NCBI RefSeq assembly: GCF_006345805.1
Contig: NC_042998.1
Location: forward strand, 21,328,001-21,392,000
Origin: Octopus sinensis
Lineage: Eukaryota
Direction of reading: 5' to 3'
Length of the DNA: 64,000 nucleotides
Part shown: one piece after another, positions 12,659 to 60,364 of the stretch
Position numbering within the stretch: position 1 is the stretch's first letter
How the letters are laid out: the number at the start of each line of letters is the position of its first letter
Notes under the pieces: generated by a model
What the model was told of the DNA's origin: nothing
Seen by the model: the letters and a program-made list of their open reading frames with translations, nothing else
The model's database searches: none
Position numbers and translations under genes: made by a program

Positions 12659-13107
12659 ATGACTCAAAAACCGAAGAACCGAAAGATGAACCACCAGGGT
12701 ACTGTGAAAACTCTGGAAATGACACTGCTTTCGATAATCATTTGGCACTTGAACATCCTGAACAACCTGAATATCCACCACCACCGGCATATACACCACG
12801 ACCTGAACATCCACAACCTGGATATTTACCACAATCCGGATATCCACTACAAACTGGATATCCACCACAATTCGGATATCCACTACAAATCGGATATCCA
12901 CCACAAATTGGATATCCACCACAACCTGGATATCTAGCACAACCTAGATATCCCCCACAACCCGGGCATCCCCCACAACCCGGATACCTGTTACAGCCAC
13001 CACTACCTCTGCAGCAACGACTACAACAACCACAACAACCAAGAGCATCAGCACCACCACCACCACCACCACCACAACAACAACAACAACAACAACAGTC
13101 TGTTATT
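12659..13107 (+). CDS. Gene A exon 2: Pro/Gln-rich N-terminus with 10 GYPPQx hexapeptide units, poly-P/poly-Q and PPxY motifs (CD225/dispanin family protein)
   Basis: ttttacAG acceptor (phase 1), open frame DSKTEEPKDEPPGY...QQSVI, GTAAGC donor at 13108; exon and both flanking introns align with gene B exon 2. Confidence 0.85.
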
Positions 13108-13462
13108 GTAAGCAAATATTTTTTCGTTTCATTTTACGTCTTCACTATTCTTCAAGCATTTATCCTGAACAGAGATCTTATCTGTAGCAAGTTTTAGTCA
13201 TCAAAAGGTGAATATTCTAGGAAATCATCTTTAAGCGATTTTAGCCAGTCATATCATTATATGGAGCAGAATAAATGATTTAGTTTGGACTTTATTTTAT
13301 CAATCTTTTTTCATTGAATAACCGACAGGTTGTACTAAACTACAATGGTAACAGTAGCAATCGGAGTACCTGGCATAGAAGATATATATACGAATATATA
13401 CGTGTGTGCGTGCACGGATGTATGCTTGTGTATGTGTGTGTGTTTGTATGTATGTATGAATG

Positions 13463-15625
13463 CGTGACAGCACATTCTACACTGGCAAGTCAGTGCTTTT
13501 ATCGATGTGACATTTGGAGTAGTTTGTTCTGAGAGCTTGTTCTTGAGAGCTGCACACCGATGCCTGAGTGGGCCCTTTTAAGTCTACTTTCTGCAGTCAT
13601 TGCCAAATTCTATTCCAATCAGTCGCATCTTTAGTTTTCAAGAGCTGACTGCATTTGTTGTCCTGCCAAATTTTCCTCCTCTGCGCACTCAGATCTTTCT
13701 TAAATTGTGTTGGATCTACGGCTTCGTTCAATTTCAAAGTTCACTGCATTTTCACTGCTTCAATCATTTCTTTTTTACACTCCTTGATATACCAAGCTAG
13801 GCTATTTTCCTCTTCCTTTACACAACCTTCACAACACACTAATCCCCGTCCTCCTTCCTCTTTACATACAATATTTACACAACACTCTTGAGGTATATTC
13901 CCTTGTTCATTAATTTACGTGTTCTCCTGTCCATCTCTTGTAATTCATGCTTCTTCCACGATACAATTTCTGCCCCATATCACATCAAAATAACAGCCTG
14001 CTCTAATCTTATAGCGGCTATTTAGCAACGATTGGAGCACAAGCCGAGTTCTTTTCAAATACTCTTTCTTTAATCTTGTGGTCTTTCATCTTATCTCTTT
14101 CAATGATAACCATGTACTTATATTCTTCCTCTCCGACTTATTTTATAGTTTCACTACTTACCGTCTTGATCCCCTGTCTTTTACTGATTTTTGAGAATCA
14201 TTACACCTCGATCCCAAATTCCAAGCCATATATCTTTGCTAATCATCTGCACAGTTGCCGTCAAACTCTCAATTTAGGTCATTCATAAACCACAGATTAT
14301 TTACTTTTACCCTACCTAGCATGTACCCCCCACACAACACTCTTAAAACACTCGTTAGTGGAGAGGCGAAAGACTGCACCCTTGAAAAATTCCTCTTTTA
14401 ATGTTTAACTCTCTCAGCATATCTCTCCATGCTGTGAGTTCAGTACGCCATGTTGTCATTGAGTTTGGTATTAACTTCAGGATACTGTTTGATATAATGC
14501 CTGTTATCAGTTATTTCATCAGTGGCAAACAAGATATTGGTCGGAAATTTCCAACCGCATTCCCTTTACTTGGGTCCTTCTGGCATAGTACCTATTTCTT
14601 TATTGCCCACAAGGGGCTAAACACAGAGGGGACAAACAAGGACAGACAAAGGGATTAAGTCGATTACATCGACCCCAGTGCGTAACTGGTACTTAATTTA
14701 TCGACCCCGAAAGGATAAAAGGCAAAGTCGACCTTGGCGGAATTTGAACTCAGAACGTAGCGGCAGACGAAATACGGCTACGCATTTCGCCCGGCGTGCT
14801 AACGTTTCTGCCAGCTCGCCGCCTTCTGGCATAGTGTCGTTCTTCCTTTTGTCTGTTTAATCTTTACTTCTCAATTCTCTGTTTATATCACTTTAGTTTA
14901 TGTGCTTTAAATTTCAACCTCTGTTTTAATTCCTCAATCGCAACATTGATTCCCTTCCTATTCATCCTATACTTCCTCTCTAGCTCAACATATTTCTCTT
15001 ACTTAACTTGTTTTCTCTTTTTCCGTTTCAGAATATTAATATTCTTTCTGGTCTCGTTAATAGACTGCGTTATTCTCCTTTTCTACCATGGTTCCTTCAG
15101 GTTATGCTGATATTTACCTTTGGCTTTCAAACCTAACTTCCGGGCTATAAAGATCGAGATTGCATTTATCAGTTTGTTGGTGTCTATAATGTCAGTCCTG
15201 ATATCATCACTGATACCATTTATCTTCCTCACCCATTTATTGAGTTTCTTTCTGTTTACTTTTTAAACGCCAGATAAAAGCTCTGTTCACCAGACGTCCA
15301 AATATCAAAGATTTCATTTAAAATGGATAACTGTTCCTCGGTTCCGTTATCGCTTTCCTGTTCAATAATCTCAGCTTCATGCTCGTTTTCTTCACTTAAC
15401 TCTACGGCCATAATTTCACTATCTGCATTCTCTTCCTCATCCTTCTGTTCACTGCTGGTCTTACTATCCCTAAGCACCTGTTGCTTAATGCTTTCTAGTT
15501 CAACTGGAGATAACCATTCATTCTTTCTGATAGCTCTAGCTGGGTCACACAGATGTTGTTCACTTAATTCAAATATGTCTCTGTCAATCCATACCCTGTG
15601 TATTCCTTTGCTATATCCTGTAGGG
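13463..15625 (-). mobile_element. R4/Dong LINE, internally deleted (paralogous to 52640-55000 and 46082-46945)
   Basis: GYSKGIHRVWIDRDIFELSEQHLCDPARAIRKNEWLS N-terminal domain; RT remnants; AAQEQALRTN...CRMC. Confidence 0.85.
14590..14821 (-). mobile_element. SINE family A, full length, 14-bp TSD
   Basis: TSD ccttctggcatagt at 14576-14589 and 14822-14835; empty site visible in the paralogous LINE near 53676. Confidence 0.9.
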
Positions 15626-15999
15626 GGCAAGGCGGCGAGCTGGCAGAAACGTTAGCATTTCTAGCATGCCCAACATTACCCGGTAACCTTCTTTTCAGAG
15701 CTTCTATCTCCAATTCTGGTAAATAGGATTTGGGCTTGACTGTCACAGGACAGGACTTGCGCAAGCTATTGGGTCATTTTATATCAACTACCTTCACCAC
15801 CTAGGCATTTGAAGACAAATAGAAAAGATAAATAAATAAAAATAATACTAATAAACATTTTAATTTTTTTTTAAATAAAGCAATAAAATAAAAAAGAATT
15901 CTTAATTAAAAAAATAAAAAATAATGAAAAATAAAAAATAATAATAATAATAATACAAAAAATAAATAAAGATTAAAAAAATTAAAATCGTGATAATAA

Positions 16000-16990
16000 T
16001 TATTATTATTTATTGTCATTGCACAACTTCTAACGCTGGACATGTACTACGGTACCAGTTGTTCACTACCAGTAATACCCCTACTTTTTCAAGCAAATTC
16101 ATCGAAAACAGATACATCCACTCACAGAGATTCGATCACTTTTCTTTTGCTACTTACCACTTAGGAGATCTATTGACATGGTTGGTCCTTTTCTGTGACG
16201 TTCTGATATCTAATTGAGCAGTTACAACTTTAGCAGTGGAATAGATAAGGTTATTTAAGGTTGTTAGGTCATTTTCCTAATTTTTTAAGATCTGTCTAAG
16301 CCCAATGTGATGTATCATGATTATTTTCTATGCTGCTTGAGAGTTTTGGTATCGGTTTTCTATTGATCATATCAGTAAACTAAGGCATGCTGCGTTCTTT
16401 CATAATAGCATATTTTACTTCTATGATTTCTTTATTATTCACTTCAAATTCTATCATTTCTATTTTGGTGTTATTGTGGTAGGCCCCGACATGCATCACT
16501 TAATTTATTTGCTTCTATATGTCAGCATACTTCGTTGCCTACTAAATTTCCCCGTGAAGTGAATGTTTTTACAATGAGGTTATTGTTTGGGTTTAGTTGG
16601 GCTGTATAGAAAGCATTCAACACATCTCTATAATCACCTCCAGTCTATTTTATGCACTTTGCTTTAGATGATGCTTTTGGTGGTGTCACTACAGGTCTAG
16701 GATTAGGGTCATCTTGGTTCAGGTTGCCTGGTACTTCGTTTGTTTTTTTTTTGAGAGTTTGTTCCAGCAGCAGACTTTTCGATATCAGTCTGGTTCCACA
16801 TTGAGTATCGCGGTGCTTGATGTCCCAGGCGATGATCGATCCGGCATGAGTTTTGGCTTGTCATTAAAGCATTGACAATAGGAGACGGGTCTGTATGTTC
16901 TGGGTTGACTTTTTGACATGACACCGTTTCCTTGTACTTCCAATGCTGGAACAAATTCTCAAAAAAAAGAAAAGAAACGAACTACCACGC
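16000..16990 (-). mobile_element. R4/Dong LINE 5' fragment (second subfamily), degenerate
   Basis: DYRDVLNAFYTAQLNPNNN and DLTTLNNLIYSTAKVV match the N-terminal region of the element at 37975-42170. Confidence 0.65.
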
Positions 16991-17137
16991 AACCTAAACC
17001 AAGATGACCCTAATCCTAGACATGTAGTGACACCACCAAAAGCATCTAATAGAGCAGTACAACTTTATCAGTGGAATATATATTCGTCGTAGATCGAAAA
17101 TCACCTCTATTTTTCTTGGTACCTGTTTCCGGGCATA

Positions 17138-17354
17138 ACTCTTTTACTCTCTTTACTTTTTTACTTGTTTCAGTCATTTGACTGCGGCCATGCTGGAGCA
17201 CCGCCTTTAGTCGAGCAAATCGACCCCGGGACTTATTCTGTGTAAGCCCAGTACTTATTCTATCAGTCTCTTTTGCCGAACCGCTAAGTGACGGGGACGT
17301 AAACACACCAGCATCGGTTGTCAAGCAATGCTAGGGGGACAAAGACAGACACAG

Positions 17355-17403
<49 letters not shown>

Positions 17404-17568
17404 TACGACAGGCTTCTTTCAGTTTCCGTCTACCAAATCCACTCACAGGGCATTGGTTGGCCCGGGGCTATAGCAGAAGACACTTGCCAAAGATGCCACG
17501 CAGTGGGACTGAACCCGGAACCATGTGGCTGGTTAGCAAGCTACTTACCACACAGCCACTCCTGCGCC
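17138..17568 (-). mobile_element. SINE family B
   Basis: Reverse complement of 11694-12122. Confidence 0.9.
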
Positions 17569-18067
17569 ATAACTGCTTAGAGATCTTTTAAACTGAGTGA
17601 CTAATTTGAACCTTTGCATATTCGTTTGTGGGGAATCGCTTTCTTTTTGTTTGGTATGCCATCCTCCTGATACATGTTTTTCTTTTATTTTCTGTATGTT
17701 TTGTGTTGGCATTATTTATGTTGCTTGTAAATACTAGGATGAATGGAGAGTTGCATGTACTTACTGCGTAATTAGTGTATTTTTACCAGGGTTCTTGGTG
17801 TTGGTTTCGTCGTCTTGCGTGTCTCGTTGAGATATCACGCATTTAAGAAAGAAAACTATACAGTGCGTAACAAAACTCTTTCCGATTGTTTTCATTCCTC
17901 TGCTTTCCCATAGTTGTATCTCGAAGTTTTCCTTCCATTGCACCAACATTACTGGATTAAGTTTGTTTTGTGGAGAGATCTTCTTAGAGTACGTCCATGT
18001 TGCGCTCATCATCGCCATATGCATCACTGGATAATTATGTTAATTTTTTGATTTCTTCTCTTTTCAG

Positions 18068-18151
18068 ACACAAAACCAAGAACTAGAATACTTTACATTT
18101 AAGTTGACCGCAGCAATTCTTGTCACCATTTTCTGTTGTAAACATCTCTAA
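18068..18151 (+). pseudogene. Truncated relic of original exon 3 of gene A (pseudo-exon / alternative acceptor)
   Basis: ttttcAG then TQNQELEYFTFKLTAAILVTIFCCKHL*; KLTAAILVTIFC is identical to gene B exon 3, and the upstream intron matches gene B's acceptor region. Confidence 0.8.
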
Positions 18152-18188
18152 ACAATTATACTATTTTTTTTACTTCTTCCATTTTCAG

Positions 18189-18299
18189 ATACAATACGAG
18201 CAACCACGATACTTTGTATGGAGTATGGTTAAAGCAGTTCTCGTCACCTTTTTCTGCTTTGCTCCAACAGGCATTGCAGCTATTTTTTATGCATCTAAA
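18189..18299 (+). CDS. Gene A exon 3: first half of CD225 domain
   Basis: ttttcAG...GTAAGT, 111 nt, phase 0/0: IQYEQPRYFVWSMVKAVLVTFFCFAPTGIAAIFYASK (P-x-Y-x-x-W-S...FC...P.G..AI CD225 pattern). Confidence 0.88.
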
Positions 18300-18361
18300 G
18301 TAAGTAAAATAGGAACATTTTTTGCAAGAAATTCTAAGTATTTTCATACATTTTATCCAGT

Positions 18362-18520
18362 TGCGGCTGTATGATAAAAAGCTTGCTTCTCAACCGCATG
18401 GCTCCAGTTTCAGTTCTACCACATCTGGGTCAAGTATTTTGTACAATAGCCTCGTGTTGATCAAAGATTTGGAGTGAATTAAGTAGATGGAACCTGAAGG
18501 AGCTCAGTCATACACACACA
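18362..18520 (+). mobile_element. Old SINE B head fragment shared with gene B (56980-57130)
   Basis: Same position ~60 nt after exon 3 in both paralogs. Confidence 0.7.
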
Positions 18521-18557
18521 TACGTACACATAAATACACATGAATATATGTGAGTAT

Positions 18558-18760
18558 TATTTCTTTATTTACCACAAGGGGCTAAACATAGAGGGGACAA
18601 ACAAGGTCAGACAAAGGAATTAAGCCGATTACATCGACCTCAGTGCGTAACTGGTATTTATCTAATCGACCCCGAAATGATGAAAGGCAAAGTCGACCTC
18701 GGCGGAATTTGAACTCAGAACGTAACGGCAGACGAAATACCGCTAAGCATTTCGCCCGTG
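18558..18760 (-). mobile_element. SINE family A
   Basis: Family A core. Confidence 0.85.
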
Positions 18761-19330: not shown

Positions 19331-19935
19331 AAATGTAACTAATTCTCTCAGTTATGGGTTTTGTTGCTGGTGGGAGGTTGCCAAGTTCCTGTCATTCAAT
19401 AGCAACACTTACGTAACGTATGTGATATCAATAACGGCCACTTGTTCGATATTTGTGTTGGCGTCAGAACTGGCCAGCCAGTGTCTTTAACTATTTTTGA
19501 CGATCTAGTGTGCTGGTATGAGTATTTTATGCAGTGTTTAGTGTAATCAGATCAGCTGACGTACAATCACCTACACCATACACCCAAAAAGACAGTTGTT
19601 TAGCTGCTCCTATCTGAGTTATGACTACAGCTTGTTTTTCAGTGGAGCAGTGCATTCAACGGTCGACTATTTCCAAAGCGGTGGCAGTATGTGTTGCGAC
19701 CTGGTCTAGTGCTCTGAGTGATACTGATGGAAGTGTTTGTCCCTCAGAATGATTAAGTTGAGGCAAACAGTCAAGTCCTGCTATTAATATAAGACATACA
19801 CTTATTGCATTGACAAATTTTAACAACAACAGTTAGATATTTTTGAGCCAAGTTCAACATCAAATCATATGCAGGAGAACTGATCTATGATGTTTTAGGC
19901 ATTTTGATTACATTATCCAGTGTGATACTATATAA

Positions 19936-21078
19936 TACCTATTTCTTTACTACCCACAAGGGGATAAACACAGACAGGACGAGCAAGGACAAACGGATTA
20001 AGTTGATTATATCGACACCAGTGCGTAACTGGTACTTATTTAACCGACCCCGAAAGGATGAAAGGCAAAGTAGACCTCGGCGAAATTTGAACTGAGAACG
20101 TAGCGGCAGATGAAATACCTATTTCTTTACTACCCACTTGGGGCTAAACACAGAGGGGACGAACAAGGACAGACAGACAGATTAAGTCGATTACATCGAC
20201 CCCAGTGCGTAACTGATACTTATTTAACCGACCCCGAAAGGATGAAAGGCAAAGTGGACCTCGGTGGAGTTTGAACTCAGAACGTAGCGGTAGACGAAAT
20301 ACCTATTTCTTTACTACCCACTTGGGGCTAAACACAGAGGGGACGAACAAGGACAGACAGACAGATTAAGTCGATTATATCGACCCCAGTGCGTAACTGA
20401 TACTTATTTAACCGACCCCGAAAGGATGAAAGGCAAAGTCAACCAGCGGAATTTGAACTCAGAACGTAGCGGCAGACGAAATACCTACTTCTTTACTACC
20501 CACTTGGGGCTAAAAACAGAGAGAACGAGCAAGGATAAACGGTTTAAGTTGATTATATCGACACCAGTGCGTAACTGGTACTTATTTAACCGACCCCGAA
20601 AGGATGAAAGGCAAAGTCGACCTCGGCGGAATTTGAACTCTGAACGTAGCGGCAGACGAAATACCTATTTCTTTACTACCCACTTGGGGCTAAACACAGA
20701 GGGGACGAACAAGGACAGACAGACAGATTAAGTCGATTACATCGACCCCAGTGCGTAACTGGTACTTATTTAACAGACCCCGAAAGGATGAAAGGCAAAG
20801 TGGACCTCGGTGGAGTTTGAACTCAGAACGTAGCGGTAGACGAAATACCTATTTCTTTACTACCCACTTGGGGTTAAACAGAGGGGACGAACAAGGACAG
20901 ACAGACAGATTAAGTCGATTATATCGACCCCAGTGCGTAACTGGTACTTATTTAACCGACTCCGAAAGGATGAAAGGCAAAGTCAACCTCGGCAGAATTT
21001 GAACTCAGAACGTAGCGGCAGACGAAATGCCGGGAAGCATTTCGCCCGGCGTGCTAACGTTTCTGCCAGCTCGCCGCT
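19936..21078 (-). repeat. Tandem array of 6 SINE-A units (~182 bp), one full head; trimer higher-order structure
   Basis: Units start at ~19936, 20115, 20298, 20480, 20660, 20843; identical junction gaaatag|gtatttcgtc on the minus strand. Confidence 0.92.
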
Positions 21079-22238: not shown

Positions 22239-22388
22239 GCAAACGTAATGGCTGATATTTGGAATATAGAAGCTGCAAAGGAAGCAAACGCAGCTGCACG
22301 TCTATTAATCAAAGTATCGTTTGTTGTTGGTATTCTCGTCATGAGTTTTGGACTCATCCTACCTTTAATAAATGCCGTCACGAAATAA
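22239..22388 (+). CDS. Gene A exon 4 (terminal): second half of CD225 domain + TM helix
   Basis: tcttctAG acceptor; ANVMADIWNIEAAKEANAAARLLIKVSFVVGILVMSFGLILPLINAVTK*. Confidence 0.88.
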   Translation, partial: ANVMADIWNIEAAKEANAAARLLIKVSFVVGILVMSFGLILPLINAVTK

Positions 22389-23006: not shown

Positions 23007-23166
23007 TACGACGGGCTTCTTTCAGTTTCTGTCTACCAAATCCACTCACAAGGCTTTGGTCGGCCCGAGGCTATAGTAGAAGACACTTGCCCAAGGTGCC
23101 ACACAGTGGGACTGAACCCGGAACCATGTGGTTGGTAAACAAGCTACTTACCACATAGCCACTCCT
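22718..23166 (-). mobile_element. SINE family B (3' of gene A stop codon)
   Basis: Family B sequence; (ctctttta)n tail. Confidence 0.9.
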
Positions 23167-24250: not shown

Positions 24251-24570
24251 TCTTCTGTCATGTTATACAATGGGAAGTGGAGTTCACAACAAACATACAA
24301 ATTGCATTTTCAGACAAGGGAGTAGATCTCCAAAGCAGCGGAGCCGTAAGGACAGCAACGAAAGATGGGGTACATACCCCGTATAAAACGGACAAACAGC
24401 TGACAGCGGGAAGCAACTGGACTTCAACCCGTACCTAAGCTAAGCTAAGCGGTATCCACGATAACAATCACGTGAAATTTAAAGCTAAATTACAGACATT
24501 CGAATGTGATAACATTTTATAAACAAACGCCAGATGTGGTTGGTAATTTGGAGAACAGAAATTAATGAAA

Positions 24571-25246
24571 GGCGGCGAGCTGGCAGAATCGTTAGAACGC
24601 CGGGAGCAGTGCTTAGCGGTATTTCGTCTGCCGTTAGGTTCTGAGTTCAAATTCCGCCGAGGTCGACTTTAGCTTTCATCCTTCCGGTGTCGATAAATTA
24701 AGTATCAGTTACGCACTGGGATCGATGTAATCAACTTAATCCATTTGTCTGTCCTTGTTTGTCCCCTCTATGTTTAATCCCTTGTGAGTAATAAAGAAGC
24801 AAGTATTTCGTCTGTCTTTACGTTAAATGCGGCGAGCTGGCAGAACTGATAGCACGCCGGGCGAAATGCGTAGCTGTATTCCGTCTGCCGTTATGTTCTG
24901 AGTTCAAATTCCGCCGAGGTCGACTTCGCCTTTCATCCTTCCGGTGTCGTTAAATTAAGTATCAGTTACGCACTGGGGTCGATGTAATCGACTTAATCCC
25001 TTTGTCTGTCCTTGTTTGTCCCCTCTATTTTTAGTCCCTTGTGGGCAGTAAAGAAATAGATATTTCGTCTGCCGTTACGTTCTGAGTTCAAATTCCGCCG
25101 AGGTTGACTTTGCCTTTCATTCTTCTGGGGTCGATAAATTAAGTACCAGTTGCGTACTGGGGCCGATGTAATCGGCTTAATCCCTTTGTCTGTCATTATT
25201 TGTCCCCTCTATGTTTAGCCCCTTGTGGGCAATAAAGAAATAAGAA
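24571..25246 (+). repeat. SINE-A cluster: monomer + 22-nt read-through, then dimer
   Basis: Heads at ~24571 and ~24828; headless unit from ~25060 with the same junction as the 19.9-kb array. Confidence 0.88.
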
Positions 25247-26389: not shown

Positions 26390-26618
26390 GCTTGATTTGG
26401 CAGAATTGTTAGCACGCCGGGCGAAATACATAGCCGTATTTCGTCTGCCGTTACGTTATGAGTTCAAATTTCGCCGAGGTCGACTTTGCCTTTCATCCTT
26501 TCAGGGTCGATAAATTAAGAACCAGTTATGCACTGGGGTCGATGTAATTGACTTAATCCCTTTGTCTGTCCTTGTTTGTTCCCTCTATGTTTAACCCCTT
26601 GTGGGTAGTAAAGAAATG
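26390..26618 (+). mobile_element. SINE family A
   Basis: Family A core. Confidence 0.85.
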
Positions 26619-29599
26619 GGTCTTTTGCTCAAGGTCATTTCGGTCAAAGATGTGCTGAGATTCACTTGGTATACCTTAAAGTCTTATGGGTGTAGTTTCT
26701 TATACGGAGAGGGGGATATGAAAACAGGATAGGCGTATGCGTGAGGATCGGCTTGCGAGTATGTGGTCTAATGTGCGTGCTTATGTTTTTGGATAGGTTT
26801 TGTGAGTGAACGTGTATGATCGTATGTATGTGTGTGTGTGTTATTAGGACAAAATCTCCGGAGGAAAAATTCTTCTCGGACAAATTTTTCCACAAAAATC
26901 CCCACCCAACTTCGAGTCTAGCATAGCAGCCTTTAATAAACAAAAGCTTTCTCTCTACTATCAAAATTCACACTATAACAACTCTGAATGCACGAGCGGC
27001 TAACATATACACAGCTCCAGCATTGAACCCTTTACGTTAGACCACAGCCATAACCCAACCTATCCTATTAACAGTATCCAGAATTCTACCACAACTTTCA
27101 CCACCGTTACAGAGAGAATAAGGAACAACAACGATAGCAATAATAACGATGATAGTAATTATGATACTAGTAACTTAGACCTTTCTACCCTCATCGCTAA
27201 CCTCTCCTCTAACAGTATTATCTCTTCTATTCCTGGAAATAATCTCCAAGGTACACCCACTTGTAACAGCCGTCCTGGGTCCATCTGCTCTCTACAAACC
27301 CATTGTAGAAATGTAATGTAATTTATAAATGCATATAATTTATAATGAAAGAGCCTTGGCTCTAGGCTAGAAACCAGCTCTTTCTCTATTGGCAAGAAAT
27401 CTTGAAATAAAACTGAACAATGACATACATACATGTACATGAACATGACACCGTCAACATCAGTGGTGCAGACAGCGAGGACCGCTTAAAATCCTTTGAA
27501 CACTGGCTTCTTAAATAATACCAGTTCCTCTCACCTAGGTCTGTAACTGATTAATTTCTCCTGTTATAAACGAAAGAAGCACTTGACCGGATTTTTTAAC
27601 ATATACATTAAACCACGTGGAATTTCGGTAGCGATATCATAGCTTATTCCAAAAACAACACCGAAGAAAACAGAACTACGTCACCAATTAGCTATCCAAG
27701 AAAACATAAGTATTTCTCTCATTTTACGTGAACTTTACATCGAAACCAAGACTTAAGTCAGTGCTGTCAAAACGCTCGTGCTGAAGCGATTAAAAAATAC
27801 TGGAAAGAAATTAACCCCATCTTAAATAACTTTACGACGAAACATTTTCGGCAATAAGCATTTTTCTTTAAAAGCATTGCTGACTACGATGTCCGGAATC
27901 TACCAGCGGCTATCATTAAATTCGTATGCCTCTCAAAATTTACTTGAGTCAACAAAGACGGCTGTGGAATATATCCAGCTTAGGGACATCTTGAAACTAC
28001 AGCTCAGGGAATTTTTCTACTTTTACAAAAATATCGTTCAGCGACAGGTTATTCTAAACAACTTTAAGAAAAAGAATCTAACAGCATTAATGCTGAAAAT
28101 AACCGATGTCGCTGGAGAGTGCGTAGAAGAATGTGATATTAGTTATTTGAATATTTATATCCTTATATACACAGGTACTATTACTGTTCGAGAGCACATG
28201 ATAAATCTGTACTTTACATGGTAATGAAATTTCTGAACGGAAGCAACCTAGATTGAAAACAAAATGTGATGAAAACATCAGCAATCTGCACTGCCATATT
28301 GGAAGGTTAACCACAATGATAAGATGTAAGGGGTATAATGAGTTTACACCACATCAAGTGCATCTTATGCATCAATTCAGAAAACTCGAAGGTGACTTTT
28401 CCCACAAAGCTCTTATGAGAAAGCTAAATGCAATAAATCATGAACTCAGAACACTGAGTTACAAACTCCACTGCTGTAGGAGATTTTCTAATGAGCCAGG
28501 ATATATCACAAGTTTGCTTCCAGTCCGCAGACATTGCATAAAGAGAGGAGGAAGTGAAACATTACTGTGAAGAAAGCTTCCCTTCTAGGAAAACTTGAAA
28601 CATTCTGATCTAAAGACTGAAATCGCAAGAGGAATCTCAACCTTTATGCATCATGGCTAGGTACAGTTAGGAGAGAATTCTGCATCAGCATTGACAGTAA
28701 AGTATTCAGAATTGCCTCGGAATATTTTATGATTGTAGGCAAAATGCATAACGGAAAGGTATCTGGAAGAGACATAATAGTTGGATTCTGGTAAAAGACA
28801 TTGTCATTTTACAGGAAACATTTAATATGCATATTCAAAGTGACTATGGACGGTCATACTGATGGGGCCTACTTGACTTGCTTACAGCCTGGACGTGCCT
28901 AGTGGTCAAAAATGAAACCACCGATTTGGTAGGAAATTATAGGTCCTTTCCTTGCCTAAATATTATGTTTGAATTGTATGCAATGCTGCCTCAACCAATT
29001 TATCCAGGGTCATTTTAAATCCAGCAACCTAGCCACTGTTGAGCAACAGGTGAAAGAAGAGAGTGTTAGGATGTACTGTTAAGCTTACAGCTTTCATAAG
29101 CAAAGCTGTACTGTCTGGAGCATGAAGATATTCTAGAAATCTTACGAATGTGTGTCTTAATTATAGGGAAAACGTTTGACTGTATTTCATACTCATGGCT
29201 AATAAAATGCCCTCATCTAGCAAAATTGAGTTCCATCTTAGTTGTTACTATCGAAGGACTCACAATGACCTGGGCGACGATTCTCACATTTACAAGTGAG
29301 AGCGAATAGATAATCTCCACTGTTGTAAATATATCAAAGGGAATATTCCAATGGGATCATCTTCCTGTAATTCTGTTCATTTTGTAATTAAACCCATTAT
29401 CTCATTCCTGCAACAAAAGACAAATGGTTACATGCTAGCGTCTGCAACTGCTAGAGATATTAATGTAACAAATAATTTCTTTTTGGTTGACCTTAATATT
29501 TATGCTAAAATGTTAACAATGCCAAAAACCAGTTGGAATTAATAACATTTTCGCTTGACATAGGAATGGGAAATATGCCCAAAAGAAGTGTTCCTATTT

Positions 29600-32623: not shown

Positions 32624-32633
32624 ATGGAAGACA
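32624..32633 (+). CDS. Gene B exon 1 coding part (ATG GAA GAC A)
   Basis: agcATGG Kozak context, GTAAGT donor at 32634; phase 1 matches the exon 2 acceptor, giving MEDNNKTTEE. Confidence 0.65.
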
Positions 32634-35576: not shown

Positions 35577-35809
35577 CGTTTCTTTACTACCCACAAGGGG
35601 CTAAACACAGAGAGGACAAACAAGGACAGACAAAGGGATTAAGTCGATTACATCGACCCCAGTGCGTAACTGGTACTTATTTAATCGACCCCGAAAGGAT
35701 GAAAGGCAAAGTCGACCTCGGCGGAATTTGAACTCAGAACGTAGCGGCAGACGAAATACAGCTACGCGTTTCGCCCGGCGTGCTATCGGTTCTGCCAGCT
35801 CGCTGCCCT
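35577..35809 (-). mobile_element. SINE family A, full length, 17-bp TSD
   Basis: TSD tattaaagtcaccaatc at 35560-35576 and 35810-35826; empty site in gene A near 12555. Confidence 0.9.
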
Positions 35810-35913: not shown

Positions 35914-36269
35914 ATAACAAAACAACTGAGGAACCGGAAAATGATCCACCAGAATACTCTGAAAAACCTGGAAACACACCTGCTTTTGCGAATCCTTTGG
36001 CTTCTGAACATCCCGGAGAATCTGGATATCCACCGCCACCAGCATATGAACCACCACCCGGATATGAACCACAACCCGGATATCCACCACAATTCGGATT
36101 TCCACCACCACACGGATATCCACCACAACCCGGATATCCACCACAATTTGGATATCCACCACAACCTGGATATCAACCACAACTCGGATATGCACCACAA
36201 CCCGGATACCCGTCACAACCACCAATTGTGCTACAAGCACTGAATCAACAACACCAAAACCCTGTTATT
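35914..36269 (+). CDS. Gene B exon 2: Pro-rich GYPPQx repeat region with PPxY motifs
   Basis: ttttacAG acceptor; NKTTEEPENDPPEY...QNPVI; GTAAGC donor at 36270. Confidence 0.87.
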
Positions 36270-47446: not shown

Positions 47447-47991
<545 letters not shown>

Positions 47992-50287
47992 TATTTCATA
48001 AATTTGTCATATAGACAGTAGAAAGAGCTTTGCGGGCTATACAATCACATTAATGAATGAAATGAATTATAATGAATAGATGAGAGACGAAACCCAACAT
48101 CCGACGATTGGATTTTTCTCGAAAACACATTTTCTTTTTTTTTTTTTTTTAAATCAATATAAGGTTTCAAACCTTTTACAAGGAGGCACTAAAACCTCTT
48201 ACTTAACATATTTTCTTTTTTCTTTCTTAAAACACAAAATTGAGGTTATAAACCACTACAAAATAGTCTAATAAGGTGAGGTTTTAAACTCTGTAACGAG
48301 GGTCTTTCACCTCCTACTCTTTCGATATATCCATCGATATATTCATCATTATCTTCAGTGCCGCTTGAGTTCCTGTTATCCGCCATTTCCCATGCCTCAC
48401 TCATATAGGACATGTAAGTCGTGTAAGGGCCACCCGGCCATATGCGACACTCCCCAAAACCTTTAAGCCTTTCCCACAAGGGAAACCTTATGACCTCCAC
48501 AGCTATCTGTGGAGGTCATTCGGGATCCCGTGTGAAGGGCATATCTACTGTTTCTTTATGTTCTTCTACTATTTTTCCACCTCCCCGCCCTTGTAGAAAA
48601 AGATAATCAATTGATCATCTTTAAGGGTGGGGGTGGTTTCTTCCACCGTGGGTGGCACAACTTCGGGGCATGCAGTCAGCACATCATCTCCCTGCTGAGA
48701 TGACCCGTTCTTCTTTCTTTTTTTTCTTTTCTTCCTGGCTTCGGGAGAGTGGAGCTCTTCCGCTTTGTCCGGAGACTCTTCCCCGCCTCCCGAAGCCTTA
48801 GGTTCCTTCGGCGGGCAACTATTGTTGCCCGCCTTCTTCCTTTTTAATCCTTTTAGAGTTGAGGAGGCTGAAGCCTCCTCGACCACATCCACCTCTCCCT
48901 TTGACCGGGTAGAGGAGGTGGCATCTGGTGACTGTTCCAGGACCTACCATGGTCCTTGGGGCAGTTCCTTTTAATGTGGCCTGGCTGCAGGCACGAGTGA
49001 CACTTTGGGGGACGTCCCTCAAGTATCACCGGATACCTGCAGCCAGCCATTTTCAAGAAATCTGGAAAAACCAGTTCTGTTGCGGCCGATGGGTCCACAG
49101 GGTCAAAATCGCTTTTGACCCTTCCCAATCGACCGCCGGCAATACCCTTACATTTAAGAGCCTGGGCCAGCCATCCCCCAGTCCCCGTCGGATGGTATCT
49201 TCAATCCAATCTGCTTCGGTACCCGGGGGGAGCCCACATACCCAGGCTCGTATTAATTTTCTTCCACAATATGACGGGAGAAACAAAATTTCTTTGCCTT
49301 CTAAAGGCTGACTCGCAAACTGTCGAGCCTTTTCCCCGTTGTCAAACAGCAACCATACGGTTGCATGTTTGACACCACGGGATATATATTTTACAGAGGA
49401 CAAATGTTCTTTCAATTCATTTTTTATGACTTGTTTTGGGAACACGGTGATGGAATTAAGAACTTTAGAATACGCTCTAAGTACGACCGTCTTCTCTTCC
49501 ATATCTTTTAACCTTTGCTTAGGCGGGTTAATTTCCCACTCTAAGACAGAGTTTTTCTTTTTAAGTTCCTTCTCTGCCATGTCAAAAAACAGTTAAAAAT
49601 AGTTCAAAAGACAGTCTGCAAAAAAATTAAATCAAATATAAAAATAAAAGAAAATAAAAGAGGAGGGGAGGAAACTGAAATTAAAGTAATGAAAAGAGTG
49701 AACCAAAATTTAGAAAGAAAGAAAAATAGGAGAAGGGGAAAGTAAAAGAAAAACCTCACAGATGGCACAGACAGGGAATCCTTTGTATAATACTCCAAAA
49801 AGGTAATACAAAAGGTAATCCAAAAGGGTAATCCAAATGGCTTATTCTTATATTTTTCTGGCGAGATACGCCCACTAGAATTCACAAGAAGAATTCTCAA
49901 ACAAAAATTCTCAATTCACCGTTACGGCCAAAATTTAACACAACTGTAAAACAGTTAAAAAATCATTCTAAATTTCTTCTAGATAGTCCTTAACAGGAAC
50001 GACACTATTTTCAAACAAAAGTTTGGCAGGATACGCCTACCAAACCAATAATTTTCACAATTAAGTGAATAATATTTTCACTCAGCCTCCGGCAGACTAG
50101 AGCCCAGTGAAGCCTTGTTGCTTGTAAAAATAATTTACAACATACAACAGGTCCCCACTAGACCCCCAAAATTCTTACCTTACGGCTGAGTATTCAAAGG
50201 TTTTCAATTTAAGACGGCTTTCAAAAACACGTCTTACATCTTCGGTGTCAAGCACAACGCTGAGTTGCACATGCGCAGAAGCAACCT
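47992..50287 (-). mobile_element. ORF1-only (half-L1-like) non-autonomous retroelement, gag-like ORF with CCHC knuckle, 5'UTR intron
   Basis: TSD gtaagcaag (up to 15 nt with 1 mismatch); ATG at 49580; frameshifted ORF to ~48250 incl. CHSCLQPGHIKRNC; no EN/RT; ends at AATAAA; AAG|GTAAGA donor 50178 and polypyrimidine-GCAG acceptor 49616. Confidence 0.8.
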
Positions 50288-52640: not shown

Positions 52641-55000
52641 TGATATTACACTGTTCATCTGATCTCTGGTCTTTTTAAAATTCTGTTGGATCTACGCCTT
52701 CATTGACTCTTAAGGTTCCCTGCATTTTCACTGTTTCAATCATTTTTTCTTTACTCCCCTTGACAGACCAAGCCAGGCTATTCTCCTCTTCCCTTACACA
52801 ACCTTCACAACACACCAATACCTGTCCTTTTCTCTTTATATACAATCTTGACACATCACTCTTCGGGTGTTGATACTTGTTGATACGTGTTCTCCGGTCC
52901 ATCTCTTGTAATTCATGCTTCTTCCACAATACAATTCCTGCCTCATATCTCATCAAAGCAACCGCCTACGTGTTGATTGCTCTAATCTTATAGCGGCCAT
53001 TTAGATTCGATTGGATCACAAGCCGAGTTCTCTTCAAATACTCTTTCCTGTACAGTTCTTTCATCTTCTGTTCATTCATCTTATCTCTTTCAGTGATACC
53101 CATGTATTTATATTCTTCCTTTCCGATTTCCTTTATAGTTTCACTACTTTCCAGCTTGATCCATGGCTTTTACTGATTTTTCCCCTTTAGAAATTACCAC
53201 ACTACATTTCTCGATCCCAAATTCCGAGCCAATATCTTTGCTAATCATCTGTACAATAGCCGCCAAACTCACAATTATTTTCAGTCTTAGCAAATAGCTT
53301 TATGTCATCCATAAACCACAGGTTGTTTACTTTCACCCTGCCTATCATGTACAACACAAGCATCATTCTTAAAACGCTCGTTTGTGGCAGTATGCAGACA
53401 ACAAATAAGAGAGGCGATAGACTGTCCCCTTGAAAGATTCCCCTTGTGATATTTACCTCTCCCAACTTGTCTCCCCATGCTGTGAGTTCAGTTCGCCACG
53501 TTGCCATTGAGCTTCCTGCTCTAACGTTTACACCCTAATTGTCCCGCTGGTAGCAGGTCGATATCATCTGGATACATGCGGATGCTGTTTGATATGATGC
53601 CCATCATCAGTTTCCATATCAGTGGCAAACAAGAAATTGGTCGGAAATTTCCAACCGCATTCCCTTTATTTGGGTCCTTCTGGCATAGTATCGTTCTTCC
53701 AATCGTCATACAGGCCGCCACTTGAATCTCACTACTCAGTATTTCGTCCATCTGTTTTGCAAATTCTCCTGAGCAGAATTGTCAAGTTTTTTAGCCAAAA
53801 GCCCTGAACCACATCTGGCCCAGGCACGTCCCATCTCTGAATTCTCCTGCACTGATCTCTACTCATATCGGTTATTCTCAAATCCTCCTGCTGATACTCC
53901 CCACTCTCATTGAGTATCTTTAACCACTCTGCTTCAGTTTCGGGTTGTTACTCCTGAGACCATATGTTTAATCAGAATCTCTTGCTTTCTTCAGCATCAG
54001 GAAAGAGTTCTTCACCTTTTTCTTTCCCATCAAGTTCCTGATAGACTCCTGCTCAATTCTTTGTTCATAACCCTTAGTTTATGTGCTTTTGCTTACAGCC
54101 TCTGTTTTAATTCCTCAATCAATCATAATATGCATTCCTTTCTCTTCACCCTACACTTCCTCTCTAGCTCAACATATTTCTCTCGCTGAACATCATTTCT
54201 CTTTTTCCGTTCCATAATATTAATATGCTTTCTGGTCTCGTTAATAGATTGCGTTATTCTCCTTTTCCACCATAGTACCTTTGGGTTAGCGTGACATTTA
54301 CCTTTGGCTTTCAAACCTAACTTCCGGGCTATAAAGATCGAGATTGCATTTATCAGTTTGTTGGTGTCTATAATGTCAGTCCTGATATCATCAGTGATAC
54401 CATTTATCTTCCTCACCCATTTATTGAGTTTCTTTCTGTTTACTTTTTAAACGCCAGATAAAAGCTCTGTTCACCAGAAGTCCAAATATCAAAGATTTCA
54501 TTTAAAATGGATAACTGTTCCTCGGTTCCGTTATCGCTTTCCTGTCCAATAATCTCAGCTTCATGCTCGTTTTCTTCACTTAACTCTACAGCCATAATTT
54601 CACTATCTGCATTCTCTTCCTCATCCTTCTGTTCACTGCTGGTCTTACTATCCCTAAGGACCTGTTGCTTAATGCTTTCTAGTTCAGCTGGAGATAACCA
54701 TTCATTCTTTCTGATGGCTCTAGCTGGGTCACGCAGATTTTATTCACTTAATTCAAATAGGCCTCTGTCGCCCCATGCCCTGCGCATTCCTTTCCTATAT
54801 CCCCTAGCAGATATTTCATTATCATTTCTCGGATTACCCAGAAAGTATCACTCCATTAAAACCACATTCATTTCTTTCGTCCACCTTCTTTTAGCAGTTG
54901 CTTGATGACGACTGAACCCACGCTGCTCAATCGTGGGGTCCCTGCCGGGCAAGAGACCGCGAGATGTTCCAGCCTCATTCACGCCGATTTTATTTGATAT
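52640..55000 (-). mobile_element. R4/Dong LINE 5' two-thirds (paralogous to 13463-15625)
   Basis: [43 protein letters not shown]. Confidence 0.88.
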
Positions 55001-55019: not shown

Positions 55020-56761
<1,742 letters not shown>

Positions 56762-56806: not shown

Positions 56807-56917
56807 ATACCAAACCAGCAATCACAATATGTTGACGATAAGCTGACTGCAGCAATTCTTGTCACAATTTTCTGCTTTTTTCCGACAGGTATTCCTGCTA
56901 TTATATTTGCATATCAA
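56807..56917 (+). CDS. Gene B exon 3: first half of CD225 domain
   Basis: ttttcAG...GTAAGT, 111 nt: IPNQQSQYVDDKLTAAILVTIFCFFPTGIPAIIFAYQ. Confidence 0.88.
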
Positions 56918-57147
56918 GTAAGTAAAATGCAAACATTTCTTGCAAGAAATTCTATTTATTTTCATACATTTTATCCGGTCGTGGCCGTATGGTAAGAAGT
57001 TTGCTTCTCAACTACATGGTTCCGGGTTCAGTTCTACCGCACCTGGGACAGGTGTTTTCTGCAATAGCCACGTGATGATCAAAGACTGGTGAGTGTATTA
57101 AGCAGATAGAAACAGAAAACCCCGTCACACACACATACAAACACACG

Positions 57148-59427: not shown

Positions 59428-59660
59428 TATTTTTCTTTACTACCCACAAGGGGCTAAACACAGAGAGGACAAATAAGGACAGAAAAAGGGATTAAGTCGA
59501 TTACATCGACCCCAGTGCGTCACTGGTACTTAATTTATCGATCCCGAAAGAATGAAAAGCAAAGTCGACTTCGGCGGAATTTGAACTCACAACATAACGA
59601 CAGACGAAATACGGCTACGCATTTCGCCCGGCGTGCTATCGTTTCAGCCAGCTCGACGTC
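59428..59660 (-). mobile_element. SINE family A
   Basis: Family A core. Confidence 0.88.
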
Positions 59661-60202
59661 TTAATCTAGTCTACATATAATAGCTCTAACACCTCAGTAG
59701 CCATCAACAAAGAAAAAGCATGACTTTTCGCAGCTTTGATGAAATATCTACTTCTATAAGAGCAGCGGTTATGAAACTGACTAATAATATCAGTTCACTA
59801 CCACCACAACTACACCCGCCCTGCAAAAATATCGGTGGAATTTGTCGTCAAGGTAACACCCCCACCATGCGTTCCTTTATTAAGAAGAAACAATATTGTT
59901 CATCCTTATAATTCTATATAATTGCTGTTGTTAAGGCGATAAGCTGGCAGAATCGATTGCACGTCGAGAAAAATATTTAGCGGTATTTTGAACGTCTTTA
60001 AATTCTGAGTTCAAATCTCTCCAGGTCCACTTTGTCTTTCATCCTTTAGGGATAAATACAATATGTACTTGTTGAGTGCTGGGCTCGATGTAATTCACCT
60101 ACCCACTCACCCCAAATTGCTTAGAAACCAACATATTTGTTGTCGTTGGGTCTTATTAGCGTTCTTTAAATGTAAACTAACTCTTGTCTTTCTGTCTTCT
60201 AG

Positions 60203-60364
60203 GCAAACTCAATGGCCCGAATGGGAAATATAGCAGATGCAAACGAAGCAAACATTAAGGCAAGACATTTCATCAGAATATCAGTAATTTTTGGTTTTAT
60301 AATTACGCTTGGAACCATCCTACCCCTTATTATAGTATTTTCGGTTGTTAGCGGTATTAATTGA
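60203..60364 (+). CDS. Gene B exon 4 (terminal): second half of CD225 domain + TM helix
   Basis: tcttctAG acceptor; ANSMARMGNIADANEANIKARHFIRISVIFGFIITLGTILPLIIVFSVVSGIN*. Confidence 0.88.
   Translation, partial: ANSMARMGNIADANEANIKARHFIRISVIFGFIITLGTILPLIIVFSVVSGIN

What the first reader, a model, noticed from the sequence alone, without database searches (positions are those of the whole stretch)
18030..18299. Exon replacement caught in the act: relic half-exon followed by a divergent replacement exon 3
Seen: the acceptor region and half-exon 18068-18136 match gene B's exon 3 (KLTAAILVTIFC identical; 4 differences, all synonymous). It then breaks into ~50 nt of unrelated intron end and a second acceptor, whose exon has a different 5' half (PRYFVWSMVKAVLVTFFC); the downstream intron is again gene-B-like. 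Inference: a ~120-bp segment from a third paralog (or an older duplicate) was inserted at the conserved VTxFC codons, swapping the N-terminal half of the CD225 domain. Use of the upstream acceptor gives ...VTIFCCKHL*, a probable NMD target or a truncated protein ending in a CC/CaaX-like motif.
Basis: partly seen in the sequence, partly recalled or inferred. Interest (0 to 1): 0.75.

Follow-up and report, generated by a model that had tools for sequence, protein, structure and literature searches.

The report
Old duplicated splice site, octopus CD225 gene
One octopus membrane-protein gene carries a 121-base duplication across an intron/exon border, which leaves a spare splice site and half-exon stranded in the intron; the two copies are about as diverged as separate genes of the family, so this is a known kind of gene-structure scar rather than a replacement in progress.

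Summary
The window is Octopus sinensis chromosome CM016860.1 (about 21.328-21.392 Mb). It holds two PRRT1-like CD225/dispanin paralogs, A and B.

- There are two acceptors exactly 121 nt apart (exon starts 18068 and 18189).
- Each acceptor is followed by a version of the first 23 codons of exon 3.
- The upstream one reads ...KLTAAILVTIFCCKHL*.

One claim is wrong. The "~50 nt of unrelated intron end" is a homologous copy of the intron end, with its own branch-point-like motif, polypyrimidine tract and AG. The feature is therefore a head-to-tail 121-bp duplication (18019-18139 and 18140-18260) spanning the intron 2/exon 3 border.

The only protein model for this gene, a chimeric RefSeq model, uses the downstream copy. 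The upstream copy would give a stop codon 148 nt before the next junction.

The copies differ by 31%. Outside an 18-nt scrambled patch (18216-18233) they differ by 25%, no less than paralogs Z, B and C differ from each other. No donor paralog turned up.

Gene A is a mosaic of exchanges between paralogs, so I cannot separate an old in-situ duplication from an out-of-register exchange between paralogs. I could not reach RNA-seq data or the O. vulgaris ortholog. "Caught in the act" is not supported. Interest is low to moderate.

The parts
12659..13107 (+). Gene A exon 2. It encodes the proline/glutamine-rich N-terminal region and ends in phase 0 at the donor 13107|GTAAGC.
   Evidence: Translation and tblastn of P0001. 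Joining it to exon 1 (outside the window, L001:26559-26568) gives an intact 239-aa ORF.
18019..18139 (+). Copy 1 of the 121-bp unit: 49 nt of intron end plus 72 nt of relic half-exon (the upstream, stranded copy).
   Evidence: Aligns in register with 18140-18260 (83/121 identical) and with the intron 2/exon 3 borders of paralogs Z, B and C.
18043..18067 (+). Upstream (decoy) 3' splice site: yTnAy motif with its A at -17, a tract with 18/20 pyrimidines, and AG at 18066-67.
   Evidence: Simple counts cannot tell it apart from the working acceptors of Z, B and C.
18068..18151 (+). Reading frame opened by the upstream acceptor: TQNQELEYFTFKLTAAILVTIFCCKHL, ending at TAA 18149-18151.
   Evidence: The stop lies 148 nt upstream of the exon 3 donor, and the product has no Pfam hit.
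18140..18260 (+). Copy 2 of the 121-bp unit: intron end, working acceptor and the first 24 codons of exon 3.
18189..18299 (+). Working exon 3 of gene A: 111 nt, phase 0 at both ends, first half of the CD225 domain.
   Evidence: Matches residues 119-155 of XP_036367721.1 exactly. The 236-aa part of the gene A protein encoded in the window (exons 2-4) hits Pfam CD225 at 42.7 bits against a cutoff of 27.1.
18216..18233 (+). 18-nt hyper-divergent patch GTATGGAGTATGGTTAAA, which contains the direct repeat GTATGG-a-GTATGG. It encodes VWSMVK.
   Evidence: 12/18 mismatches to copy 1, Z and B, against 20-25% elsewhere in the unit (Fisher p 2e-4 to 1.5e-3).
22239..22388 (+). Gene A exon 4: second half of the CD225 domain, plus the stop codon.
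   Evidence: tblastn at 100% to P0001 residues 156-204; ORF check.
13108..13283 (+). Start of intron 2, a tract nearly identical to paralog C. It marks a recent exchange between paralogs.
   Evidence: A-C differ at 11/207 sites (5.3%) against 16-21% for the other pairs; quartet split ZB|AC 9:1:0.
14867..15618 (+). Tract in intron 2 that is 92% identical to gene B intron 2 (54049-54802), against a background of 74-78%.
   Evidence: I found only these two copies (plus the O. vulgaris ortholog of B) in all loci held, so it is not a dispersed repeat there.
56807..56917 (+). Gene B exon 3, the single-copy counterpart used for comparison.
   Evidence: It is the ortholog of O. vulgaris CAI9718712.1.

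Best explanation
The feature is an old 121-bp direct duplication spanning the border between intron 2 and exon 3 of a PRRT1-like CD225/dispanin gene (gene A) in Octopus sinensis.

Each copy carries a complete 3' splice site (branch-point-like motif, polypyrimidine tract, AG) followed by the first 23-24 codons of exon 3. Because the downstream copy runs straight into the rest of the exon, splicing from 13107 to 18189 restores an ordinary 239-aa reading frame. The upstream copy is then simply removed as part of the intron.

If the upstream acceptor is used, the mRNA gains 121 nt (3n+1) and stops after 27 codons, 148 nt before the next exon junction. That gives a product without a CD225 domain and a likely target for nonsense-mediated decay.

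The upstream copy is therefore a stranded relic and decoy acceptor. The unusual peptide of the working exon reflects paralog-level divergence plus one 18-nt complex mutation, not a recent imported cassette.

What is shown: the anatomy, the homology of the "unrelated" spacer, the age (paralog-level divergence) and the reading-frame consequences.

What is inferred: that the downstream acceptor is the one mainly used, which rests on a single RefSeq model; and that the duplication arose in place rather than by exchange between paralogs.
For: - Exact 121-nt period with register-perfect alignment of both copies to each other and to the single-copy borders of Z, B and C.
- Both acceptors have 18/20 pyrimidines, a yTnAy motif with its A at -17 as in every paralog, and no intervening AG.
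- The RefSeq protein XP_036367721.1 uses 18189. The canonical ORF is intact (239 aa) and the window-encoded part (236 aa) hits Pfam CD225 (42.7 bits). The upstream-acceptor product is 180 aa with no Pfam hit.
- Outside the 18-nt patch, all four copies (Z, B, upstream A, downstream A) are equidistant at 19-25%. In the neutral intron part they differ at 11-14 of 49 sites.
- The working copy's excess difference is confined to 18216-18233.
- No donor paralog exists in the protein databases.
- Tandem duplication followed by intronization of one copy is a documented route (PMC2891723).
Against: - The two copies never group as sisters (under 11% bootstrap). The upstream copy shares 4 derived sites with paralog C, at 61% bootstrap.
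- The upstream copy's own-branch changes are distributed like those of a working exon: 0 in the 23 alignable sites of the polypyrimidine tract/AG region, 2 (both synonymous) in the 36 membrane-segment nt, and 5 in the 33 variable nt. The chance of 2 or fewer in those 59 sites under neutrality is 0.03-0.10. This fits a relic that was retired recently, has been refreshed by gene conversion, or is still in use.
- Gene A is demonstrably a mosaic of tracts from paralogs C, B and Z, so an exchange origin is mechanistically plausible.
- No RNA reads were examined.
Confidence: 0.55

Rival explanations
1. Out-of-register exchange between two diverged paralogs. A non-allelic recombination, gene conversion or template switch joined one paralog just after its FCC codons to another paralog 49 nt upstream of its acceptor. 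The two copies then have separate paralog histories. The upstream copy was gene A's working exon start until the event.
For: - The copies are no closer to each other than to other paralogs, and they never group together.
- The upstream copy ends in TGTTGT (Cys-Cys) exactly as in paralog C, and shares 3 further derived sites with C.
- Its left flank (17826-18013) is C-type.
- Its substitution profile looks like that of a working exon.
- Gene A contains clear exchange tracts with other paralogs: 5.3% from C, 8% from B, 16.7% from Z.
Against: - No donor was found at the protein level or in any locus I fetched.
- Outside the 18-nt patch, the downstream copy is as close to Z as the upstream copy is.
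- Quartets on the right flank are unresolved (5:4:3), so no change of phylogeny at the junction can be shown.
- The C-type left flank may only reflect a rearrangement specific to Z and B.
- The signal is weak: 121 sites carry very few informative characters.
Confidence: 0.3
2. The upstream acceptor is kept because it is used. One possibility is a regulated unproductive splice choice that lowers gene A output through a premature stop. Another is an alternative half-exon: acceptor 18068, weak donor GTT|GTAAAC at 18137/18138, and an internal acceptor CAG|G at 18270/18271. That route is in frame and would give ...VTIFCC-IAAIFYASK...
For: - The upstream polypyrimidine tract and AG have no lineage-specific change, and the membrane-segment codons have only synonymous ones (pN 0 with pS 0.43 against B).
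- The alternative path is in frame.
- O. vulgaris annotates a 196-aa product with no Pfam hit that starts at the orthologous exon 1. This would fit a truncated isoform, but I could not retrieve its sequence.
Against: - The counts are tiny (p 0.03-0.1) and gene conversion from working paralogs would produce the same pattern.
- The internal donor matches only 4 of 9 consensus positions.
- The in-frame product would lack the conserved F-x-P-T-G.
- The region has no stable RNA structure (z +1.4).
- No protein with the relic peptide exists in the databases, although its words were included in the query.
Confidence: 0.12
3. Gene A is a decaying duplicate gene, and the duplication is one of several lesions with no consequence for the animal.
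For: - It has the lowest CD225 score in the family (42.7 bits against 48-51).
- W-N-I-E-A replaces the G-x-x-x-G/small motif that Z, C and D keep (motif function in PMC7665892).
- RefSeq has no clean model for it, only a chimera with Z.
- The O. vulgaris product at this locus has no Pfam hit.
Against: - The 720-nt ORF is intact across four exons, with all splice sites canonical.
- With about 9% lineage-specific change, I roughly estimate (not computed) that a stop-free ORF would occur by chance only about 5% of the time.
- Exon 4 evolves at pN about equal to pS in all paralogs, not only in A.
Confidence: 0.1
4. The feature is an assembly artefact: a falsely duplicated segment.
For: None specific. 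I could not check the site in a second assembly.
Against: - Artefactual duplications are near-identical, whereas these copies differ at 38/121 positions.
- The spacing from paralog Z to paralog B is 57.1 kb in O. sinensis and 57.0 kb in the independent O. vulgaris assembly.
Confidence: 0.01

Closest known systems
Tandem duplication within a gene followed by intronization of one copy (Rogers-type model; Drosophila cases in Lehmann et al. 2010, PMC2891723; potato RdRp, PMC4974935)
   Same: - A short head-to-tail duplication doubles a splice signal.
- The segment between the two equivalent sites is removed from the mRNA.
- The coding sequence is therefore unchanged, and one copy ends up as intron.
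   Different: - In those cases the duplication lies inside an exon and creates a new intron from a proto-splice site.
- Here it spans an existing intron/exon border. No new intron arises; the old intron is lengthened by 121 nt and gains a decoy acceptor.
- The copies here are very old (31% different).
Tandem exon duplication giving mutually exclusive exons (own knowledge: Kondrashov and Koonin 2001; Letunic, Copley and Bork 2002)
   Same: There are two diverged versions of the same coding segment in tandem, and only one can be used per mRNA.
   Different: - Only the acceptor and the 5' half of the exon are duplicated.
- The upstream copy has no good donor.
- The unit is 3n+1 nt long.
- Using the upstream copy gives a stop codon.
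Non-allelic gene conversion or unequal exchange in tandem gene families
   Same: Gene A carries tracts that are 5-17% from paralogs C, B and Z against a 20-30% background. The family phylogeny is star-like and conflicts from segment to segment.
   Different: - Conversion replaces sequence; here 121 nt were added.
- Neither copy has a close donor.
Competing tandem 3' splice sites coupled to nonsense-mediated decay (unproductive or 'poison' splicing)
   Same: The upstream acceptor is as strong as the working one by simple measures. Its use places a stop codon 148 nt before the last junction but one.
   Different: Use of the site, regulation of it, and conservation beyond neutral expectation were not shown.
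PRRT1/SynDIG-type CD225 (dispanin) proteins, Pfam PF04505
   Same: - Proline-rich N-terminus followed by a CD225 domain.
- Paralog Z aligns to human PRRT1 in PDB 9zks (E 6e-10).
- The window-encoded part of gene A passes the Pfam cutoff.
   Different: Gene A has Trp and Ala where paralogs and IFITM3/PRRT2 have the two small residues of GxxxG. It also has a Lys in the first hydrophobic segment.

Membership tests
CD225/dispanin (PF04505) | Profile match above Pfam's gathering score | tested here: met
   The 236-aa window-encoded part of the gene A protein (exons 2-4) scores 42.7 bits against a cutoff of 27.1. B scores 51, C 49.8 and D 48.2. The upstream-acceptor product has no hit.
CD225/dispanin (PF04505) | GxxxG / small-xxx-small motif in the loop after the first hydrophobic segment (needed for IFITM3 and PRRT2 oligomerization, PMC7665892) | tested here: not met
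   Gene A has W-N-I-E-A. Z has G-D-I-A-G, C has G-N-L-E-G and D has G-N-A-T-G. The paper notes that IFITM5 and IFITM10 also lack the motif, so it does not define the family strictly.
Boundary-spanning tandem duplication with one copy left in the intron | Head-to-tail repeat whose period equals the distance between the two equivalent splice sites | tested here: met
   The exon starts 18068 and 18189 are 121 nt apart. The units are 18019-18139 and 18140-18260.
Boundary-spanning tandem duplication with one copy left in the intron | Both copies keep the splice signal, and the mRNA regains the unduplicated frame by using one of them | tested here: met
   The signals are intact in both copies. The RefSeq model uses 18189 and the ORF is 239 aa. 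No RNA reads were checked.
Boundary-spanning tandem duplication with one copy left in the intron | The two copies descend from one locus (in-situ origin) | tested here: inconclusive
   The copies differ by 25-31%, are not sisters in any analysis, and the quartets are unresolved.
Exon replacement by gene conversion from a paralog | An identifiable donor that is closer to the tract than to its flanks | tested here: not met
   The best match of 18140-18260 is paralog Z at 77-80%. No protein with YFVWSMVKAV exists apart from this gene. I could not search the whole genome.
Exon replacement by gene conversion from a paralog | Sequence is replaced, so length is conserved | tested here: not met
   121 nt were added, and both versions are present.
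Mutually exclusive tandem exons | A whole exon with both splice sites is duplicated, and both versions keep the frame | tested here: not met
   Only the acceptor and 72 nt were duplicated. The best downstream GT is GTT|GTAAAC. The unit is 3n+1, and the upstream version ends in TAA.
Unproductive splicing / NMD-coupled alternative acceptor | Premature stop more than 50-55 nt upstream of a downstream exon junction | tested here: met
   The stop at 18149-51 lies 148 nt before the donor at 18299. Whether octopus NMD follows this rule is not known to me.
Unproductive splicing / NMD-coupled alternative acceptor | The site is actually used | not testable with these tools
   No read data were available. 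Two exact-ORF look-ups in public assemblies found nothing.
CaaX prenylation motif | C-terminal Cys, two aliphatic residues, then any residue | tested here: not met
   The C-terminus is C-K-H-L, and Lys and His are not aliphatic. The rule comes from established knowledge.

The most novel reading that the evidence does not exclude
The stranded upstream acceptor and half-exon may be kept by selection as a working part of the gene. It could be a decoy that diverts a regulated share of transcripts into a premature stop. Or it could be an alternative first hydrophobic half of the CD225 domain, spliced in frame through the weak donor at 18137/18138 and the internal CAG|G at 18270/18271. In the second case one gene would make two versions of the membrane-inserting segment: the ancestral LTAAILVTIFCC and the derived MVKAVLVTFFCF.
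Probability: 0.1. Interest if true: 0.55.

Novelty: new member of a known kind. Interest (0 to 1): 0.28.

Why it matters
This is a clean natural example of how a duplication that straddles a splice site can be tolerated. The gene keeps its reading frame by using the copy that is contiguous with the rest of the exon, and the other copy stays in the intron as a full-strength decoy acceptor.

It sits in a young, fast-evolving cluster of PRRT1-like CD225 genes in octopus. These genes exchange sequence with each other. Such a system is useful for studying how gene conversion, small duplications and splice-site competition shape new paralogs.

It also has a practical side for annotation. The RefSeq model for this gene is a chimera with its neighbour, and an upstream decoy acceptor can mislead gene predictors. 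It does not open a new mechanism.

Tried and rejected
- **Tandem Repeats Finder** on 17800-18500 found nothing, because the copies are only about 70% alike. The repeat had to be shown by BLAST and alignment.
- **"Gene A has no exon 1."** I first concluded this because pattern and BLAST searches found nothing in the window. That was wrong: exon 1 (ATGGAACCCC|GTAAGT) lies 20.6 kb upstream of exon 2, outside the window.
- **"The two A copies share derived sites."** Two candidate sites turned out to be ancestral states shared with paralog C.
- **"A_down was converted from paralog D (P0005)."** They share ATGGT and TTT, but the intron end and variable part of D are very different, and those states are common in outgroups.
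- **Reaching the O. vulgaris ortholog failed.** The fetched loci stop 23.7 kb before the site and 4.7 kb after it. The 196-aa O. vulgaris product was returned by no search.
- **Exact-ORF look-ups** for public read assemblies covering the site found nothing. P0134 is not on record.
- **RNA structure** that might hide the upstream acceptor: none (z +1.4). Rfam: no match.
- **Dating by phylogeny** did not work. Quartets and neighbour-joining bootstraps on 121-270 sites are unresolved.

Full report
**Where the window comes from.** Window positions 1-32388 are 100% identical to positions 34505-66892 of a locus fetched from Octopus sinensis chromosome CM016860.1 (assembly GCA_006345805.1). The window is therefore about 21,328,001-21,392,000 of that record.

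It holds two paralogous genes of the PRRT1-like CD225/dispanin family.
- Gene A: exon 2 at 12659-13107, exon 3 at 18189-18299, exon 4 at 22239-22388.
- Gene B: exon 1 at 32624, exon 2 at about 35914-36269, exon 3 at 56807-56917, exon 4 at 60203-60361.

Other family members lie outside the window:
- Paralog Z (XP_029658084.1) lies upstream of the window.
- Paralog C (P0003) lies about 140 kb downstream on the same chromosome.
- A more distant paralog D (P0005) lies about 0.5 Mb away in O. vulgaris.
- An O. bimaculoides relative (P0118) was also fetched.

Gene A's exon 1 (ATGGAACCCC|GTAAGT) is 20.6 kb upstream of exon 2, outside the window. With it, the canonical product has 239 aa. The 236-aa part encoded in the window passes Pfam's CD225 threshold (42.7 bits, cutoff 27.1).

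**Checking the observation.**
- There is an acceptor before 18068 and another before 18189.
- The 36 nt encoding KLTAAILVTIFC differ from gene B at four synonymous positions.
- The second exon encodes ...PRYFVWSMVKAVLVTFFC...
- Reading from the upstream acceptor gives ...VTIFCCKHL*.

Two points need correcting. First, "four differences" applies only to those 36 nt. Across the whole half-exon, 18 of 69 nt and 11 of 23 residues differ from B. Second, the ~50 nt between the half-exon and the second acceptor are not unrelated. They align base for base with the 49 nt before the first acceptor (36/49 identical) and with the intron ends of Z and B.

The feature is therefore a head-to-tail repeat with a period of exactly 121 nt: 18019-18139 and 18140-18260. 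Each unit contains 49 nt of intron end and the first 72 nt of exon 3. The similarity is far beyond chance (E 2.8e-9 between the copies, E 9e-22 to gene B).

**Anatomy and consequences.** Both units carry a complete 3' splice site: a yTnAy motif with its A at -17 (as in every paralog), 18 of 20 pyrimidines, AG, and no intervening AG.

The downstream unit is contiguous with the rest of exon 3, so splicing 13107>18189 gives the normal frame. This is what XP_036367721.1 uses.

Splicing 13107>18068 adds 121 nt (3n+1). It stops at TAA 18149-51, 148 nt before the exon 3 donor. The 180-aa product has no detectable CD225 domain. Its C-terminus CKHL is not a canonical CaaX box.

The best GT after the relic (GTT|GTAAAC, 18138) is a poor donor. 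The region has no stable RNA structure (z +1.4) and no Rfam match.

**Age and relationships.** The copies differ at 38/121 positions. In the neutral intron part, every pair among Z, B, upstream A and downstream A differs at 11-14 of 49 sites.

The excess difference of the working copy is confined to an 18-nt patch, 18216-18233 (GTATGGAGTATGGTTAAA, with an internal GTATGG repeat). This patch mismatches every other copy at 12/18 positions. Outside it, all pairs are 19-25% apart (Fisher p 2e-4 to 1.5e-3).

O. sinensis and O. vulgaris differ by only 1-2.5% here. The two copies therefore separated long before those species did.

Phylogeny on so few sites is unresolved:
- Four-copy site patterns split 2:3:2.
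- The right-flank quartets split 5:4:3.
- A neighbour-joining bootstrap gives under 11% for the two A copies as sisters, 61% for upstream A with C, and 36% for Z with B.

**Context: a mosaic gene.** Gene A's relationship to the other paralogs changes along its length.
- It is 16.7% from Z at the end of intron 1 and the start of exon 2.
- It is 5.3% from C in the first 207 nt of intron 2.
- It is 8% from B over 14867-15618.
- It is 20-27% from all of them around exon 3.

Its intron just upstream of the relic (17826-18013) is homologous to that of C but not to those of Z or B. Sequence exchange between paralogs has therefore happened repeatedly in this gene.

**How it most likely arose and works.** Two origins fit the data.

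(a) An old in-situ tandem duplication across the border, with both copies diverging since. This is a single common kind of mutation and needs no donor. Once the patch is set aside, it explains why both copies are about equally distant from Z.

Several observations favour it:
- The copies are not sisters.
- The upstream copy shares four derived sites with C, including the terminal TGTTGT (Cys-Cys).
- The upstream copy's own-branch changes look like those of a working exon. None fall in the 23 alignable sites of the polypyrimidine tract/AG region. Two fall in the 36 membrane-segment nt, and both are synonymous. Five fall in the 33 variable nt.

That last pattern has a chance probability of only about 0.03-0.1 under neutrality. 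However, conversion from working paralogs after an in-situ duplication would produce the same pattern.

No donor exists among 5.8 billion clustered proteins or the 1.84 billion representatives, nor in any locus I fetched. These searches are not a whole-genome scan.

I put (a) at about 0.55 and (b) at about 0.3. Under either origin the present-day mechanism is the same. The downstream copy is the working acceptor and exon start. The upstream copy is an intronic relic that can act as a decoy.

**Comparison with what is known.** The nearest described process is tandem duplication followed by intronization of one copy (PMC2891723; PMC4974935, listed). The difference here is that an existing border, rather than an exonic proto-splice site, was duplicated.

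It is not a pair of mutually exclusive exons. The duplication covers half an exon, there is no good donor, and the unit is out of frame. It is not a classical conversion-type exon replacement, because sequence was added and no donor is known. It could work like an NMD-coupled alternative acceptor, but use of the site is untested.

The gene family is PRRT1/SynDIG-like CD225. Paralog Z aligns to human PRRT1 in PDB 9zks (E 6e-10).

**Verdict.** It is wrong on the "unrelated" spacer, on recency, and probably on a foreign cassette.

This is a new instance of a known kind of event, of low to moderate interest. The decisive data are splice-junction reads, the orthologous site in O. vulgaris and other octopods, and a whole-genome donor search. 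None of these could be reached with the tools here.

Noticed in passing
L001:13569-13724 joined to window 12910 (inside gene A exon 2): The only RefSeq protein covering gene A (XP_036367721.1, 'annexin A7-like isoform X4') is a chimera. It joins exon 1 and part of exon 2 of paralog Z to the middle of gene A exon 2. The join lies inside the GGxTATCCACCA (GYPP) repeat and has no GT-AG boundary. It is probably an artefact of reverse transcription or of the gene model.
   Followed up: partly
L001:26559-26568 (about 7.9 kb upstream of window position 1); L006:27078: Gene A's real exon 1 (ATGGAACCCC|GTAAGT, M-E-P) lies 20.6 kb upstream of exon 2. O. vulgaris annotates a 196-aa product with no Pfam hit starting there. 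That product is probably CAI9718711.1, judged only from its neighbours' consecutive accession numbers. None of my searches returned it, so its exon use is unknown.
   Followed up: partly
window 13108-13283; 14867-15618; 12463-12735: Gene A is a mosaic. These tracts are 5.3% from paralog C, 8% from paralog B and 16.7% from paralog Z, against a background of 20-30%. This indicates repeated gene conversion among CD225 paralogs that lie up to about 140 kb apart.
   Followed up: partly
window 22260-22274 (exon 4 of gene A): Gene A encodes W-N-I-E-A where paralogs Z, C and D have G-x-x-x-G. In IFITM3 and PRRT2 this motif drives oligomerization, and Gly-to-Trp at its second glycine causes loss of function (PMC7665892). 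In gene A the Trp is at the first position and Ala at the second.
   Followed up: partly
window 22239-22340, 60203-60304; L001:17311-17412: The first 34 codons of exon 4 evolve with pN about equal to pS (0.31-0.34 against 0.33-0.40) between all of A, B and Z. The 12 membrane-segment codons of exon 3 in Z, B and the relic, by contrast, have pN of 0-0.04. Constraint within the CD225 domain is very uneven.
   Followed up: no
window 19934-21028; single copies at 14589-14825, 18555-18758, 24568-25242, 26398-26625, 35579-35807, 59428-59662 and elsewhere: A SINE-like element of about 184 bp forms a six-copy tandem array in gene A intron 3 and is scattered through both genes. The C-terminal ~50 residues of another family model (P0134) match translations of this element, which suggests the element was taken up as an exon or that the model is wrong.
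   Followed up: partly
window 687-3873 and 4832-6678: Two degenerate microsatellite blocks of several kb, (ACAT)n and its complement (TATG)n, form an inverted pair about 92% alike. They account for the extreme GC and AT skews at the start of the window. They lie inside the 20-kb first intron of gene A.
   Followed up: no
window 18365-18498 and counterparts at 56983-57117, L001:16818-16985, L004:19709-19875: An element of about 135 bp sits at the same place in intron 3 of A, B, Z and C, with further copies at 11705-11844, 17418-17557, 23021-23160 and 47863-48000. It is absent from paralog D and from the O. bimaculoides gene, so it marks A, B, Z and C as one subfamily.
   Followed up: no
window 56720-56760; L001:16565-16595: Paralogs Z and B share a (CAT)n microsatellite and a rearranged sequence just upstream of the exon 3 acceptor region. 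A and C lack this, which supports Z and B being a pair.
   Followed up: no
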